NCBI GenBank assembly: GCA_013265495.1
Contig: MU058769.1
Span: forward strand, 332,477-396,476
DNA length: 64,000 bases
Direction: 5' to 3'
From: Vicugna vicugna
Taxonomy: Eukaryota
The notes beneath the pieces are model-generated. The model made no database searches, was not told the DNA's origin, and was given only the letters and a program-made list of their open reading frames with translations. Positions 1-27,362 of the stretch are shown piece after piece. Both the position numbers and the translations under genes were made by a program. The number at the start of each line of letters is the position of its first letter. The stretch's first letter is position 1.

Positions 1-962
1 GGGACTCTGAATTTCTAGGTATCTCTGCTGTTCTCTCTCCAGTTTTATCCTGCTCCAGCCCCAGCCTTACACCCTCACCCGTAATTATCAGGGGTAATTT
101 TAGGGCCAGAAAGGGAGCCACCAGTTCTCTCTGCCTCACCCCCATACCCTGCCCTGGCGGCGCTGGGGCTGGGGATAGTCTGCAAGTGTTTCTGTAGTGG
201 GGTGGCTCAGCCTGGAGCATCTTCTTGTCTGATGCCACCTTTATGCCCCAGATTTCTGACCCTGATGCTTGGCGTTAAGAGTAAAGGAAGCCATGCAGAG
301 GGGCTGGATCTATCTCTTTTTATCCATCCTTCATTTAGTTTGATGCAACCCACCTTATACACATCCCACACTCCCCCCACTCATGCACACTCCCAGACCC
401 ATCACACTCACACTCAGCCCCTCCCAGGCACTGACTCACCCATCCCCCCGACATACATAGACAGGCAGATTTCAACACTGACACGCTCTCACAGCAACGC
501 AGAATCAACATCCTCAAATGGGGATGCAGAAACACAACCTGCACTCAGACAGATGCCCCGAGACACACACTAACCCAGACTCACTCCCAGAAGGGCATGG
601 AAATGCACCAGCACACGTGGAGACTCACACATTCACCCTCACTCCACACCTCCCCACCTGTGCGTGCAGACTCCCCTCCAGGCACAGGCGGAAGGGTGCA
701 CTCGCACACAGACACTCCCTCACTCATACCCTGTCCAGGCTTGGGAGCCAATGGGCTATGGTCTCTCCAAGCCCAGAGGCTCAGCCAGCATCCTAGCCCA
801 CTTGGCCTCCTTAGAATTTCCTGAGGAGCTCTACCCTGCCCTCCCCCCAGCCCATCTTCTTGGGCAACAAAGGAAGTACCAGAGATATCATCGGGGGGCC
901 ACACCTTTGACCCTTTCCAAATCCTTCCATCAAGCAGACAACTCTGGGACTGGGGTCTAGAA

Positions 963-1274
963 CAGTGCTGCCCAATAGAAATATAATGCAAGCCACGTAT
1001 ACAATTTTGAAATTTTCTAGTAGTCACATTAAAAAAGGTAAAAATAATGCGGTGAAATTTATTTTAATTTTATTTTACCCAATGTATCCAAAATATTATC
1101 ATTTCAGGATGTTATTCATTTAAAAGTATTAATGAGATCATTTGAGCTCTTTTTTGTGGGTGTGGTATGAAGTCTTCAAAAGCCAATGTGCACTTTATAC
1201 TTACAGTTGGAACTAGTCACATGTCAAGTGTCTGACAGCCGCATGCAGCTGGTGCTGCACATTGGACAGTGCAG
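963..1274 (+). mobile_element. MER33 (hAT-Charlie) non-autonomous DNA transposon
   Basis: Ends CAGTGCTGCCCAATAGAAATATAATGC..ATTGGACAGTGCAG match recalled MER33; flanks gtctagaa/ttctagac fit the Charlie NTCTAGAN target. Confidence 0.85.
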
Positions 1275-1557
1275 TTCTAGACGGCTTGGTCTGGCTCTCA
1301 GCCCCCGGCCCCGTGACCCAGGGAGCTATGGGAAGGAGGGGTCCTTTGTCCCCTGAGTGTAGAACGTGGAGACGTGGGGGCCCACAGGCGTGTGGCATTT
1401 GGGGAGTGGACTCTTTGCTGAAGGCCTAGTTCTCCCTGCCAGCTGCTGGCTCCCACCCAGGTGTGTGGCTGCTGTCGGGAGTGATGCAGAGGAGCTCCAG
1501 CTGGAAGAGTCCAACCACCCGCAGTGCCCCCGAGATCTAAAAAGTGCAGGTGTCTAG

Positions 1558-1833
<276 letters not shown>

Positions 1834-3639
1834 TGAGTTCTCAGCTGGGCACCTGATGAGTTTGGAGGACCGCCATCTGAGGTCTGTCCTTGCACCTTCA
1901 AGGGGGATGCGGCCTTGCCCTGCTCCCCTGCACAGAACTGCCACCAGATAGCAGCCCAAACAGTGGATTGGAGCGTGGTCCGCGGCCCATGGGCCTCAGG
2001 GCGGGCCCTGGCCTGGGCCCGCCTCTGCTGTGTGTGCTTGGACCAGTCATTACCTCTCTCTAGACCCCCATTTCCCACCTGTGAAATGAGAGCTTTGTAC
2101 TAGATCAGTGTTTTTATACTTTTTATTTTTGTAAATAGCGGGGGTCTTGAAGCTGGGGCTGGGAGGGCCTGGAGCTTTGTCCCCCTGCCTCCCCTGCCAG
2201 GGCTCCCGAAGCCACCCCCCAGGACGTGCAGGTCTTTGAGGCTTTCTGAAGCTGCTTGATGGGAAAGCCACTCAGGCTGAGGAGGGCACACTAGGGTGAT
2301 AGATCAGGCTTCCTTCCCGTCTGTAACTCAGATTCCCAGCTCTGCAGTTCTTCCTCTGCAGGCGCTCATGGCCCAGGAAGAGCCTGGATCACATGTGAGC
2401 AATGGAGGAGGATTTCCCTGGGAGGAGGCGGAACCTCAGGCCTGCGAGGCAGGAAATAGTGACTTCTCCCTTCTGCTGCCCCCAAGGTCTCGGCTTGCAG
2501 CAGGAAGCTGGCTTTGCAAGGCTCTGGGCAAGCCCTAGGGGTAGGGGAGTCTTGGGGAGGGAGAGACAGTGTCCTGTGCCTATAATGCATGTCAGAAAAC
2601 ATCTGCCTGTGGGAGGAGACACATCTGGATCCTGTTCGCTGAGGGCAGGGAGTGTGGAGCAAGGGAGTTATGAAAGATTTTTATCCTTTCCTTCGGTTGA
2701 TCTTGCATGTTTTGGTCGGAAGCTCGTGGGATGCGATGCAGAGTGTGGGCCGAGGGGCTGACTTCACCTACCACGCACACTCCATCTTATCGGATGGTGC
2801 GTGCTCAGGTTTGCTCGCTTTTGAATACCTTGTCAACATCAAGAACAACCAAGAATCTCAAAAACTGAGGGTTCGAATTTCCTTCTCTGACATTACAGAA
2901 GTTGGACCTAGTCGCCCTCCCACCCCATATCCAGGAGAACTCTTTTCTAGATTTTCCAGAACAAACACTATTTCCCCACTTTGTGAGGAAGGCTGGACAG
3001 GCAGCACACTTGGGCTCTCGGGCGGAGGCCGGCAGGAGAAGGAATGACCGGGCCTGGCCCCCCACCCCAGCTCCTCCTGGCAGGCTTAGTCCTCTGAACG
3101 TCTTAGCATCTCAGGCAGTGCTTTCCTAGGTGGGGGGGGGGGTGAGGCTGCTGGACAAAGGGGTCTTTGTGGCCAGGCTGCCTGGCCCCACGCAAGGCCA
3201 TTAATTGGGTCGCTGGTCTGGGGGGGCAGCTGCTCTCCCACCTCTTCCCCCTCCTGCCTCATTCCCTTCTGTCTCCCCTGTGGAAGTGGGTCAGTGGCAG
3301 GAGGAAGAGTAGAGAAGTGTCCCGAGGGAACCAGTTTTGCTGCTCCTCCCATCCTCTACCTGGGCCTTGGGCCTTCTCTCGGAGGCCTCTTGGGCTCAAG
3401 GGATGGGTTGCAGGGGTGCTTCCAGACCAGGGCTGGGGTCCTGCAGGGAAAGACTCGATTCCATGCCCATTCTTCACCCTCAGCCCCGAAGCCAACATTG
3501 TAGTCCCGGGCAGTGCAGGCAAGAGGCATGTGAAGGGGATAAGGCTCACTGTCCCTGCTCCCTGTGGACCGCAGCAAAGAACCAGAAGCCCTCTCCATGG
3601 GAACAGAAGGAGTCCAGAGCAGCCGGAGCAGGGAGATGT

Positions 3640-3722
3640 GGGTTCTAAACCATAACTGGCTATGTGACCTTGGACCTGTCTCATACCCTCCCTTGGTCTC
3701 AATTTCTTCACTTGCAAAATAT
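3640..3722 (+). mobile_element. MIR fragment
   Basis: tatgtgaccttggac..tcaatttcttcacttgcaaaat MIR core. Confidence 0.65.
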
Positions 3723-3870
3723 AGTCGATGCTTCCTGAGCCCCTTCAGCTCCGGCGCTGCAGGCCTGGGAAGTGGTTTCCGAAGGGTTGGCGGGAGTTGG
3801 GGGAAGGTTGCAGTCTGGGTGCTGCTGCCAGGTCTGGGAGCCTGAGTGTGTGTCACCTGACCCCACACAG

Positions 3871-3990
3871 AGCAACGAGGACAGTGTTCTCATCTGGGTT
3901 GCCAGCACCACTGCGTCCCCACCCTCAACGGGCCCACCTGCTACTGTAACAACAGCTTTCAACTGCAGGCAGACGGCAAGACCTGCAAAG
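3871..3990 (+). CDS. LRP1: LRP1 exon 4 (EGF)
   Basis: [40 protein letters not shown]; 120 nt; ag/gt. Confidence 0.97.
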
Positions 3991-4189
3991 GTACGTGTGC
4001 ACACGTGTGCAGGCCGGGGGTGGGGGCGGTGGGCCTGGATGGGGAGGAGCAAGCCAGGAAAAGTGCAAGCAGGGGGCGGGGCTACGTGCGTGATCGCCTC
4101 AGGGCATGCTGTGGGCCCTTCCCCCAGACTCTTTAAAATTCATCTGAAAATATGCGTTATATGTGCGTTTTCTTGTAAAAAAATAAATA

Positions 4190-4570
4190 AGTAAATCCTT
4201 ATCGATAAAACCAAAGTCCCCTTTGACAAACCCTCTTCGGTTCCAGTCCTTTTCCCATCTCTCTGGAGGGCCGATACTTTCGTTACCAGTTTGCTGTCTG
4301 CCCAGGCCTTCAACTGTCCACTTGTACAGTTGAATGCACTGTTTACATGTATGTGCCCTTTTTTACATAAATATCATGCTGTACATATCTTTTTTCAGTT
4401 TTTTCACCCAGTGTGTTCTAGAGATTTTTCCCTATTAATACGTAGAGATCTACCTCATTCTTTCAAAAACCACTGTCATGTGTGGCGGTCGCCACAGTTC
4501 ACTTGGCCGTCTCCCTGTCGATGAGTAAGATGTTCCCAGTTTCTCTCTGTTACAAACAATACAAACTTTT
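4190..4570 (-). mobile_element. Old L1 (L1ME-like) 3' fragment
   Basis: AT-rich; agagatctacctcattcttt..tgttcccagtttctctctgttacaaacaat typical antisense L1M 3' end. Confidence 0.6.
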
Positions 4571-25525: not shown

Positions 25526-25606
25526 CCTACCCCACCTGCTTCCCCCTGACTCAGTTTACCTGCAACAACGGCAGATGCATCAACATCAACTGGAGGTGTG
25601 ACAATG
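25526..25606 (+). CDS. LRP1: LRP1 exon 19 (N-half of CR6)
   Basis: [27 protein letters not shown]; 81 nt. Confidence 0.97.
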
Positions 25607-26232
25607 GTAAGAGCTTGTTCCCCTTCACCTGCCCGGATGCCTAGGAAGCTGGAAACCACAGCCAGGCCCTGGGTGGGAGGGGAAGGGGTTTTAGAATCAG
25701 TTCACTGAATCCCTGCTGGGTTGGCTGGGGGCAGTGAGGACGAGTCAGAAACACTGGGGGAACCAAGATGGACCAAGAGGAGACCCCACCCATCACCCAT
25801 CAGCTCCATGCCTCCCCGAGCAGGGCCTGAGATGCCCATCCTCTGGCAGAGGCTCTGGGGCCAGGGAGAAATGAGCAAATAGGGCCAGAGGGGCAGAGCA
25901 AAGACAGCCCAGTGCCCAACTCCCTTCCTGCGAGCTCTGTCTCCTGGGGTCCTTGGTGCAACCTCCGGGCTCCGACTCCAGGCTCGGGAGCCCACCTTGC
26001 GGTCAGCCCTGGACCAGGTGACGTCATCCCAGAGCCACGGGGGCCGGTGGACCGTTGTGTGTGCACTGTCTCGGGGCTCTGGTTGTGTCTGGTGTGGTGT
26101 TGTGACGTGTCGCAGCAGTGGCTCGAGCCCTGGCTCTTGTGTGTGAGGATGTGTTGGGTCAGCGCCACGTTGCCCCTCATCTTTGCCGTGTCTTGTGTGC
26201 CAATGGCTGCCCTGGCGGTTTCTGTGTTTCAG

Positions 26233-26283
26233 AGAAGGATTGTGGGGACGGCTCTGACGAAAAGACCTGTCCTGAGCCTGCCG
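26233..26283 (+). CDS. LRP1: Putative alternative cassette exon ('19a') encoding [17 protein letters not shown]
   Basis: tgtgtttcag|AGAAGGATTGTGGGGACGGCTCTGACGAAAAGACCTGTCCTGAGCCTGCCG|gtcagt; 51 nt, phase 1/1 like intron 19; encodes the LDLa DCxDGSDE..C signature. Confidence 0.8.
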
Positions 26284-27194
26284 GTCAGTGCATAGAAGCA
26301 CATGCACCATCACCCCTAGATCCCCAGCTGGCCTCGGGCCGCCTCCCAGGACCCCCAGGAGCTCCCCTCCCCAAACTCCTAGGATGTGAAGGAAAAGCAA
26401 AGAGAAAAGTGAGAGCAGAGAGCACAGAGGGAGAAAGAAAACAGCGGAAGGGAAACAGCGGAGATGGGGAGGAGATGACAGAGAAGTGGGGACAAGAACC
26501 ACAAGACCTGATGCGGGAGAGCGTTAGAGACGCAGATCCAGCTGGAAAAGAGGCAGGAACACAACTCAAGGGGGACAGCCAAACCCGTCTTCTCAAGCGG
26601 CCTGGAACTGTGGAGGGAGGTCTGGTAGCCGCACCCACGAGGCCTAGAAAGCAGGACGTGCACTCGGTCACCTTCAGATGCCCTCCAGAAGCACCCCGGC
26701 TTTCCCAGCTGCAGGCAGTGCCCCTCGTGAGCCGGGCACGCAGAGCACGGGCCGGTGATGCCCACGCTCAGGGCGGGGCCTAATGAAGCCCTTCCCTCCC
26801 CAGCAGAGAGGCATCACCTACACTCCACCCACCACTGTGTCTCCAAAACCAGAGAAATCCCTGCCTTTCCCCCAGAGCGAGCAGACCCCTGCTCCCACAC
26901 CCTGCCAGACTGGGAAAGGAATGAGTCCTGTGCCCACCCCCAGCCTTCCGGGACTCAGGGACGGGCCCTCGGGGAGCCCACCCCGCCTCTCCCCGCCCCT
27001 ACCACGCGGGCCATGGTGCATGCTGCAGTCTATGCAGTTTCTGTGTCTTTTCTGTTTGTTATTTTCTCAGCGGGAGGGTTGGGTGGGTGGAGGGTGGGAA
27101 TGGGGAGGCGGGAGTGGGGGCCCCACGCTGGGGTCACAGAGAAGGCTGCTGCTTGCTGACCCCCCATCTCCTTTTCCCTTCTTCCTGCCCCCAG

Positions 27195-27362
27195 ACAATG
27201 ACTGTGGGGACAACAGTGACGAGGCCGGCTGCAGCCACTCCTGCTCTAGCACCCAGTTCAAGTGCAACAGTGGGCGCTGCATCCCTGAGCACTGGACCTG
27301 CGACGGGGACAACGACTGCGGGGACTACAGCGATGAGACACACGCCAACTGCACCAACCAGG
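27195..27362 (+). CDS. LRP1: LRP1 exon 20 (C-half CR6 + CR7)
   Basis: [56 protein letters not shown]; 168 nt. Confidence 0.97.

What the first reader, a model, noticed from the sequence alone, without database searches (positions are those of the whole stretch)
26233..26283. Hidden 51-nt cassette exon that swaps the calcium/ligand half of CR6 in cluster II
Seen: intron 19 holds an AG/GT-bounded 51-nt segment in the intron's phase (1/1), encoding [17 protein letters not shown], which carries the LDLa DCxDGSDExxC signature. CR6 is split by this intron at WRCDN|[10 protein letters not shown]. Inclusion gives [35 protein letters not shown]: CR6 gets a new C-half (DxDxD necklace becomes DxEKD) and the old half becomes an orphan two-cysteine acidic spacer before CR7. 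Flanks look regulated: about 170 nt of UG/UGG-rich sequence upstream, YCAY/GCAC motifs just downstream. Established: CR5-CR6 contribute to RAP and alpha2-macroglobulin binding through Trp/acidic residues that capture ligand lysines. Inference: a tissue-specific splice switch could retune LRP1 ligand specificity. It is absent from the canonical 89-exon model as I recall it, but may appear in predicted 'X' isoforms; I know of no functional study.
Basis: partly seen in the sequence, partly recalled or inferred. Interest (0 to 1): 0.8.

Follow-up and report, generated by a model that had tools for sequence, protein, structure and literature searches.

The report
Ancient alternative exon in LRP1
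The 51-base segment is a real alternative exon of the LRP1 receptor gene, conserved from fish to mammals; it adds a second copy of the calcium-binding half of one ligand-binding repeat, was shown in human RNA in 2007 and is in predicted database isoforms, but its function has never been tested.

Summary
Observation confirmed. Window 26233-26283 is bounded by AG and GT, is 51 nt in phase 1-1, and reads [17 protein letters not shown] between WRCDN (exon ends 25606) and [10 protein letters not shown] (exon starts 27195).

The splice bounds alone mean nothing: intron 19 holds 325 such frame-preserving segments. The signal is the LDLa signature plus conservation.
- It is the only C.D.SDE match of 26 in the window that lies outside a constitutive repeat.
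- The exon is 50/51 identical in four sequences from other mammals, whose introns are 52-84% identical.
- Duck and killifish genomes hold a 51-nt exon at the same site. pN/pS is 0.1-0.2, and the flanks are near-invariant.

It is not hidden.
- Leparc & Mitra 2007 (PMC1904267) predicted it in human LRP1 intron 19, cloned it, and saw a minor variant in 17 of 18 tissues.
- The same 17-aa insert is in NCBI models of dog, ferret, puma, eagle, duck, gecko and several teleosts.

The "C-half swap" is plausible. The chimeric repeat scores 53.3 bits on Pfam Ldl_recept_a against 52.2 for the canonical repeat. It remains untested. NOVA and RBFOX motifs are not supported, and tissue specificity is not shown.

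RNA-seq junctions in this organism could not be checked, because read laying was lost to a filter. The scan has not noted this exon before on other DNA.

The parts
25526..25606 (+). Constitutive LRP1 exon encoding the N-terminal half of repeat CR6 (cysteines 1-4, ...[13 protein letters not shown]). It is 81 nt in phase 1-1, with donor ATG|gtaaga.
   Evidence: sequence; the region is colinear with dog LRP1 residues about 972-998.
26050..26218 (+). UG/GU-rich tract upstream of the cassette. Its composition, not its sequence, is kept in duck and killifish.
   Evidence: 35.5 TG+GT per 100 nt against 12.9 for the intron; 28-34 per 100 nt in the 200 nt upstream of the cassette in two other mammals, duck and fish.
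26219..26232 (+). Acceptor region of the cassette (ggtttctgtgtttcag). The final 11 columns and 3 further ones are conserved across six vertebrate sequences. It is weak relative to this gene's other acceptors.
   Evidence: alignment A2, invariant columns; a PWM built from 36 constitutive acceptors of the window scores it 2.17 against a mean of 9.6, lower than 33 of 36.
26233..26283 (+). The 51-nt cassette exon, phase 1-1, encoding [17 protein letters not shown]. This is the C-terminal calcium-cage half of an LDLa repeat (cysteines 5 and 6) plus a 4-residue linker.
   Evidence: sequence; 50/51 nt identical in four sequences from other mammals; a 51-nt exon at the same site in killifish and duck; pN/pS 0.10-0.21; the insert is in NCBI protein models; the human orthologue was cloned.
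26284..26309 (+). Conserved downstream intronic element gtcagtgcatagaagcacatgcacca. It contains the weak 5' splice site (C at +3) and an inverted repeat GUGCAU/AUGCAC that could pair over positions +5 to +10.
   Evidence: duck and killifish are identical over 26 nt, and mammals differ at 4 positions, one at +3 and three in the putative loop; hairpin -9.8 kcal/mol, z -0.76 (window) and -2.78 (duck); the donor scores lower than 29 of 36 constitutive donors.
27195..27362 (+). Constitutive exon encoding the canonical C-half of CR6 ([13 protein letters not shown]) followed by the whole of CR7. After cassette inclusion its first 13 residues become an orphan two-cysteine acidic segment.
   Evidence: junction 26283|27195 and donor after 27362. 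PDB 1J8E (LRP1 CR7) matches the residues after the orphan segment.

Best explanation
Window 26233-26283 is the orthologue of a known alternative cassette exon of LRP1 that appears to be included at a low level. It dates at least to the common ancestor of teleosts and mammals, and it is translated.

Shown:
- It has the length, phase and splice bounds of an exon.
- Its amino-acid sequence is under purifying selection, while synonymous sites are close to saturated between fish and tetrapods.
- Its splice sites are weak.
- About 14 nt upstream and 26 nt downstream of it are near-invariant across vertebrates.
- Both the inclusion and the skipping form exist in annotated isoform sets, and inclusion was cloned from human RNA.

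Inferred:
- In the included isoform the N-half of CR6 (cysteines 1-4) is completed by the adjacent cassette half. The cassette keeps every calcium-cage position (D, D-C, D-G-S-D-E, C).
- This gives a CR6 whose acidic ligand pocket reads D-N-E-K-D instead of D-N-D-N-D.
- The former C-half is pushed into a 20-residue acidic linker with two cysteines before CR7. That changes pocket chemistry and uncouples the CR6-CR7 spacing in ligand-binding cluster II.
- Inclusion is probably held low by the weak sites, and may be tuned by the conserved element that overlaps the 5' splice site and by the UG-rich upstream tract.
For: - Sequence and frame.
- It is the only LDLa signature outside the constitutive repeats in 64 kb, both strands.
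- Mammalian conservation: the exon is 98% identical (one synonymous change), the 50 nt downstream are 96% in three of the four sequences (66% in L002), and the rest of the intron is 52-84%.
- Killifish (L006) and duck (L007) genomes hold a 51-nt AG|...|GT exon at the same site with conserved flanks.
- Substitution pattern: pS 0.40-0.74 against pN 0.07-0.15. In the first 10 codons pN is 0-0.04.
- Variable positions are those that vary in any LDLa repeat (the two residues before cysteine 6, and the linker).
- The insert is present in NCBI models of dog X1, Mustela X1, Puma, Aquila X2, Oxyura, gecko X1, Takifugu X2/X3, Kryptolebias X1/X2, Austrofundulus X1 and Nerophis. Sister isoforms lack it.
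- Human exon: peptide GDGSDEQTCPEPADN, intron 19, cloned and sequenced, a minor variant in 17 of 18 tissues (PMC1904267).
- The chimeric repeat fits Pfam PF00057 full length at 53.3 bits; the canonical repeat scores 52.2.
- The solved LRP1 CR5-6 chain (2FYJ) aligns contiguously through the cassette half.
- Weak splice sites.
Against:
- Some NCBI XP models may be propagated by protein homology, so they are not all independent proof of expression.
- No spliced protein fragment with the insert was found among proteins of 55-175 aa.
- The two LRP1 cDNA-like metagenome contigs both carry the canonical junction. This fits a minor isoform.
- The orphan half leaves two cysteines without their normal partners, which could mean misfolding rather than a working receptor.
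- AlphaFold gave no usable model (mean pLDDT 42), so which C-half pairs with the N-half is not shown.
- The hairpin has no covariation because its stem is invariant, and its z-score in the mammal is not significant.
- The insert was absent from 15 lamprey isoforms and from the two elasmobranch and the frog models sampled.
Confidence: 0.75

Rival explanations
1. Quantity-control exon. Inclusion yields a receptor that misfolds because the orphan half carries two unpaired cysteines. The receptor is retained and degraded, so the conserved, regulated exon tunes LRP1 output rather than making a working isoform. It would be a frame-preserving analogue of a poison exon.
For: The orphan two-cysteine segment follows from the sequence. 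Inclusion is low in human. The intronic flanks are ultraconserved, as is typical of regulatory exons. The splice sites are weak.
Against: A decoy needs no particular peptide. Yet every LDLa consensus position of the cassette is invariant from fish to mammal while synonymous sites change freely. There is no stop codon or frameshift.
Confidence: 0.15
2. Relic plus splicing noise. The segment is the remnant of an ancestral extra repeat or a partial exon duplication, is spliced in only by error, and has no function. Its conservation reflects an overlapping intronic regulatory element that serves the constitutive exons.
For: Inclusion is minor and needed semi-nested PCR to detect in human. The flanks are even more conserved than the synonymous sites of the exon. 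No cassette-bearing cDNA was found among two metagenome cDNA contigs.
Against: The changes follow a codon-wise pattern, with pN/pS 0.1-0.2 over at least 400 million years. Length, phase, both splice sites and both cysteines are preserved in every lineage examined. Multiple isoform models include it.
Confidence: 0.07
3. The cassette is looped out. The N-half of CR6 still pairs with the canonical downstream half, and the 17 residues form a surface loop with its own small disulfide. This decorates CR6 rather than swapping its calcium half.
For: Nothing here shows which half pairs (one search failed). The canonical half is present in every isoform.
Against: The calcium cage needs the W-x-C-D-x-x-x-D-C spacing to be contiguous; this is established knowledge of LDLa repeats. 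Only the cassette half is contiguous with cysteine 4. The profile HMM and the solved CR5-6 chain both align straight through the cassette.
Confidence: 0.1

Closest known systems
Human LRP1 'novel exon' in intron 19 (Leparc & Mitra 2007, Nucleic Acids Res 35:3192, PMC1904267)
   Same: It is the orthologous exon. It lies in the same intron, and the reported 15-mer GDGSDEQTCPEPADN matches the window's cassette-to-exon-20 junction with one K>Q change. It was predicted from splice sites plus PhastCons conservation, then cloned and sequenced.
   Different: The authors scored it as a casein kinase 1 site, which is an intracellular-signalling reading of an extracellular segment. They did not note that it is half of an LDLa repeat. 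They did no ligand-binding or folding work and made no depth-of-conservation analysis.
NCBI predicted LRP1 isoforms carrying the 17-aa insert (for example dog X1 XP_022279791.1, Mustela nigripes X1 XP_059259472.1, Takifugu rubripes X3 XP_029681819.1, Kryptolebias X1 XP_017271349.1)
   Same: The insertion point (WRCDN|DNDC) and the length are identical. The three carnivore models have the same 17 residues as the window.
   Different: They are computational models without functional annotation. Whether the window's own species has such a model is unknown.
Alternative ligand-binding-repeat exons of ApoER2/LRP8 and VLDLR
   Same: These are LDL-receptor-family genes in which cassette exons change the ligand-binding region. 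ApoER2 splicing is covered in PMC11293713, listed; the rest is from general knowledge.
   Different: Those exons add or remove whole repeats or the O-linked sugar domain. Here only a C-terminal half-repeat is added, which duplicates the half that follows.
smLRP1 (alternative exon 7a; PMC5491174)
   Same: It is another alternative LRP1 transcript.
   Different: It is a truncating terminal exon that gives a 296-aa soluble fragment, and it is unrelated to cluster II. That paper does not mention the intron-19 cassette.
Exons controlled by a stem-loop over the 5' splice site (MAPT exon 10, SMN2 exon 7 TSL2; from general knowledge)
   Same: A conserved inverted repeat overlaps positions +5 to +10 of a weak donor. 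This is what the flank may work like.
   Different: There is no covariation, no probing data and no mutational data here. The predicted stability is modest and not significant in the mammalian sequence.

Membership tests
Conserved alternative cassette exon | AG/GT bounds, length a multiple of 3, no stop codon in the frame set by the flanking exons | tested here: met
   51 nt, phase 1-1, open frame.
Conserved alternative cassette exon | Orthologous exon with the same phase and length in distant species, with conserved flanking intron | tested here: met
   four mammalian sequences, duck and killifish. About 14 nt upstream and 26 nt downstream are near-invariant.
Conserved alternative cassette exon | Both inclusion and skipping transcripts observed | tested here: inconclusive
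   Human RT-PCR and cloning come from the literature, and paired NCBI isoforms exist. In this organism no reads could be laid. Two cDNA-like metagenome contigs carry only the skipping form.
Conserved alternative cassette exon | Splice sites weaker than those of the constitutive exons of the same gene | tested here: met
   the donor scores lower than 29 of 36 constitutive sites, the acceptor lower than 33 of 36.
LDL-receptor class A repeat (Pfam PF00057) | Six cysteines and the C-terminal D-C-x-D-x-S-D-E calcium cage, with a profile score above the curated cut-off | tested here: met
   the N-half of CR6 plus the cassette scores 53.3 bits over profile positions 3-37 of 37 (cut-off 24.1). The canonical CR6 scores 52.2. 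The cassette alone is only a half-repeat with 2 cysteines.
LDL-receptor class A repeat (Pfam PF00057) | Folded three-disulfide module with bound calcium | tested here: inconclusive
   AlphaFold2 on an 8-sequence alignment gave mean pLDDT 42. The tools return no disulfide or coordinate information.
NOVA- or RBFOX-regulated neural exon | Conserved YCAY cluster or (U)GCAUG within about 200-300 nt of the exon | tested here: not met
   no GCAUG within 300 nt in the window, two other mammals or duck (one at -136 in killifish). There are 1-4 YCAY in the first 100 nt downstream, and they are not conserved.
Mutually exclusive exon pair from tandem exon duplication | Two homologous exons of like length and phase, of which only one is used per transcript | tested here: not met
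   The cassette is 51 nt and the next exon is 168 nt. All annotated insert isoforms contain both halves in series.
Poison exon | Inclusion introduces a premature stop codon or a frameshift | tested here: not met
   the frame is open and preserved.

The most novel reading that the evidence does not exclude
LRP1 carries a domain-completion switch more than 400 million years old. One N-terminal half of an LDLa repeat can be completed by either of two C-terminal halves. This gives a minor receptor isoform with a different lysine-binding pocket in CR6 and an uncoupled CR6-CR7 pair, and therefore a different ligand preference in cluster II. An ultraconserved element that folds over the weak 5' splice site would set how much of it is made.
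Probability: 0.3. Interest if true: 0.7.

Novelty: already known. Interest (0 to 1): 0.5.

Why it matters
LRP1 is usually treated as a single-isoform receptor in work on RAP, alpha2-macroglobulin, apoE, tau, amyloid-beta and factor VIII. Cluster II is its main ligand-binding region.

An exon that has kept its peptide, length, phase and flanks from teleosts to mammals is very unlikely to be idle. Yet no functional study was found. If the included isoform folds, it would mean that a fraction of LRP1 has an altered CR6 pocket and an altered CR6-CR7 geometry. Antibodies, minireceptors and knock-ins built on the 89-exon model would miss it.

The half-repeat architecture is also an unusual way to vary a disulfide-rich module.

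The practical value of this report is to join three things that had not been joined: a forgotten 2007 validation, the scattered predicted isoforms, and the new evidence here for selection on the protein and on the flanks.

Tried and rejected
- RNA-seq junction test. No reads could be laid.
- Second run search with the cassette plus 5 nt on each side. It used only 3 sampled words. Many small 2012 'RNA?' runs of a third organism label hold them, but this cannot be interpreted without laying reads.
- Protein search with the genomic ORF across the cassette. It found only unspliced ORFs from other mammals. These were useful for conservation but are not transcript evidence.
- Third and fourth protein searches for mid-length and full-length insert carriers.
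- AlphaFold2 of CR5-CR6'-orphan-CR7 from dog X1 with 8 insert-bearing sequences. Mean pLDDT was 42, which is unusable. I did not run a second job, because any deeper alignment would itself decide which half aligns with paralogous repeats, so the result would not be independent.
- Metagenome scan for the spliced exon19/cassette junction found 0 hits. The control with the canonical junction found 2 contigs, so the negative rests on n=2.
- Rfam. No family covers the cassette or its flanks.
- NOVA/RBFOX reading, mutually exclusive exons and poison exon. All were rejected on tested features.
- Genomic DNA for Takifugu X2/X3 and for gecko. The products were not on record, or the gene range was too long.

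Full report
**What is in the sequence.** The window carries most of an LRP1 gene on the + strand. tblastn with dog LRP1 isoform X1 maps residues about 65 to 4211 colinearly, at 85-100% identity per exon. The species is an unnamed mammal.

The exon at 25526-25606 encodes the first four cysteines of one LDLa repeat and ends ...NWRCDN plus one G. The next constitutive exon, 27195-27362, begins AC AAT GAC TGT, that is [13 protein letters not shown], and then encodes a complete further repeat.

Inside the 1,588-nt intron, 26233-26283 is preceded by ttctgtgtttcag and followed by gtcagt. In the inherited phase it reads [17 protein letters not shown] and hands a G to the next exon.

**Is it more than chance?** The bounds and the open frame are not. 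I counted 325 stop-free, frame-preserving AG..GT segments of 30-300 nt in the same intron. The content is. C.D.SDE occurs 26 times in the six frames of the 64-kb window, always on the + strand. Twenty-five of these map in order onto the constitutive repeats of canonical LRP1, and the cassette is the single extra one.

**It is already on record.** A full-text search found Leparc & Mitra 2007 (PMC1904267). Their PASE program required PhastCons conservation and predicted a cassette exon in human LRP1 intron 19. The listed peptide is GDGSDEQTCPEPADN. It is among 26 predictions 'confirmed by cloning and sequencing'. By exon-specific semi-nested RT-PCR it was a minor variant present in all of 18 tissues except uterus.

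That 15-mer equals the window's cassette residues 5-17 plus DN of the next exon, with one K>Q change. The authors scored it as a casein kinase 1 motif. They did not remark that it is half of an LDLa repeat.

Searching the literature for the peptide strings returns only this paper. Searches for LRP1 splice variants return only smLRP1, an unrelated truncating exon 7a.

**Annotated isoforms.** A representative search gave a carp LRP1 (P0004). A region search with it returned 120 LRP-family proteins, and cluster members of ten LRP1 clusters were then listed. Scanning these for anything between WRCDN and [10 protein letters not shown] found a 17-residue insert in the following models:

| Group | Models | Insert |
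|---|---|---|
| Carnivores | dog X1, Mustela nigripes X1, Puma | [17 protein letters not shown] (identical to the window) |
| Birds | Aquila X2, Oxyura | [17 protein letters not shown] |
| Gecko | Heteronotia X1 | ...KNCPKAT |
| Pufferfish | Takifugu rubripes X2 and X3, T. flavidus X3 | ...LNCPNPT |
| Pipefish | Nerophis | ...LHCPNLA |
| Killifish | Kryptolebias X1 and X2; Austrofundulus X1 | EKDCEDGSDELNCPKPT; ...LNCPKAT |

Sister isoforms of the same genes lack the insert. It was not in 15 lamprey isoforms, two elasmobranch models or the frog models sampled.

One caution applies. Some XP models can be shaped by protein homology, so they are not all independent proof of transcription.

**Conservation, tested on DNA.** Searching with the genomic ORF across the cassette retrieved three unspliced ORFs from other mammals, and their contigs were fetched. 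The figures below come from the alignment.

| Region | Identity to the window |
|---|---|
| Cassette (51 nt) | 50/51 in all four sequences; the one change is synonymous (GAC>GAT) |
| 50 nt downstream | 96% in three of four (66% in L002) |
| 100 nt upstream | 78-92% |
| Rest of the intron | 52-84% |

I then fetched the Kryptolebias and Oxyura genes. Both have a 51-nt exon at this position, with ...ttctgt(g/c)tttcag|A and CCG|gttagt.

Codon-wise counting gives the following.

| Pair | pS | pN |
|---|---|---|
| window vs duck | 0.40 | 0.07 |
| window vs fish | 0.71 | 0.15 |
| duck vs fish | 0.74 | 0.07 |

In the first ten codons pN is 0-0.04. The variable residues are the two before the last cysteine and the three at the end of the linker. 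These are the positions that vary in any LDLa repeat. This is the signature of selection on a translated, folded peptide.

**The flanks.** The six-sequence alignment shows an invariant block from about -14 through the exon to +25.

Downstream, duck and killifish are identical over 26 nt (gttagtgcatagatcaacatgcacca). Mammals differ at +3 and at three central positions.

The element holds the inverted repeat GUGCAU...AUGCAC, which would pair over +5 to +10 of the donor. The differences fall at +3 and in the would-be loop. Folding gives -9.8 kcal/mol in both, but the z-score is only -0.76 in the window and -2.78 in duck. The stem never varies, so there is no covariation. This is a hypothesis, not a finding.

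The donor has C at +3 and scores lower than 29 of 36 constitutive donors of the same gene. The acceptor scores lower than 33 of 36.

Its composition is kept in duck and fish. There is no GCAUG within 300 nt in the window, two other mammals or duck, and no YCAY cluster. A NOVA or RBFOX reading is therefore not supported.

No Rfam family matches the region.

**How it most likely works.** The steps here are inferred. The cassette follows cysteine 4 directly and supplies D-C-G-D-G-S-D-E-x-x-C. It keeps the spacing W-x-C-D-x-x-x-D-C that forms the calcium cage in LDLa repeats; this is established knowledge of the family.

Three results are compatible with the cassette completing CR6:
- The chimeric repeat scores 53.3 bits over the whole Pfam Ldl_recept_a profile, against 52.2 for the canonical repeat.
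- The solved LRP1 CR5-6 chain 2FYJ aligns contiguously through the cassette half.
- The CR7 structure 1J8E aligns after the orphan segment.

So the simplest outcome has three parts:
- CR6 gets a pocket that reads D-N-E-K-D instead of D-N-D-N-D.
- The old half ([13 protein letters not shown]) becomes an acidic, two-cysteine spacer.
- The cysteine-to-cysteine linker between CR6 and CR7 grows from 3 to 20 residues.

Whether the orphan cysteines pair with each other or scramble is unknown. AlphaFold2 on eight insert-bearing sequences gave mean pLDDT 42 and says nothing.

**What could not be done.**
No junction reads were examined in this organism.
- A metagenome scan for the spliced exon19/cassette junction found nothing. 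The control for the canonical junction found only two cDNA-like contigs, so this negative is nearly empty.
- A run search with the cassette alone used three sampled words and cannot be interpreted.

**Verdict.** The feature is real, is far beyond chance, and is under selection both as protein and as a splicing unit. It dates at least to the teleost-tetrapod ancestor. It is not new as an exon, given the 2007 human validation and the predicted isoforms.

What appears not to have been said before, within the papers I could search, is threefold:
- It is a duplicated C-terminal half-repeat.
- Its peptide is under purifying selection.
- Its 5' splice-site flank is near-invariant from fish to mammals.

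Function remains untested.

Noticed in passing
window:26228-26288: A run search with this 61-nt stretch used only 3 sampled words. It listed many very small (14-62 million letters) 2012 'RNA?' runs of a third coded organism label, all holding all three words. Such small runs would rarely cover an intron, so this may be spliced inclusion in another species. It could not be examined.
   Followed up: no
P0338, P0339, P0340, P0342 (Danionella GenBank models): These models join CR5 directly to [13 protein letters not shown], which skips the exon for the N-half of CR6. This is either an annotation artefact or exon skipping that would leave the same orphan half.
   Followed up: no
window:27083-27192: There are weak sub-threshold matches to mirtron-type miRNA models (mir-1236 25.6 bits against a gathering score of 115; also mir-702 and mir-4654) at the 3' end of intron 19, just before exon 20. 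They are probably a composition effect of a G-rich stretch followed by the pyrimidine tract.
   Followed up: no
window:13600-13760: The scan's notes hold another first-reader candidate on this window, a 12-nt microexon in LRP1 intron 6 (s1-236619). It was not examined here.
   Followed up: no
L009 (ERZ786672 contig, 14,594 nt) and L008: Two metagenome contigs carry the spliced canonical exon19/exon20 junction of an LRP1. L009 is about the length of a full LRP1 mRNA, so host cDNA is present in these collections.
   Followed up: no
window:24568-24713: read laying refuses this stretch. It lies in the intron after the CR4 exon. The message says the filter also trips by chance.
   Followed up: no
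window:17580-17640: A (TG)n microsatellite in an LRP1 intron shows as a CVCVCVCV run in the ORF listing.
   Followed up: no
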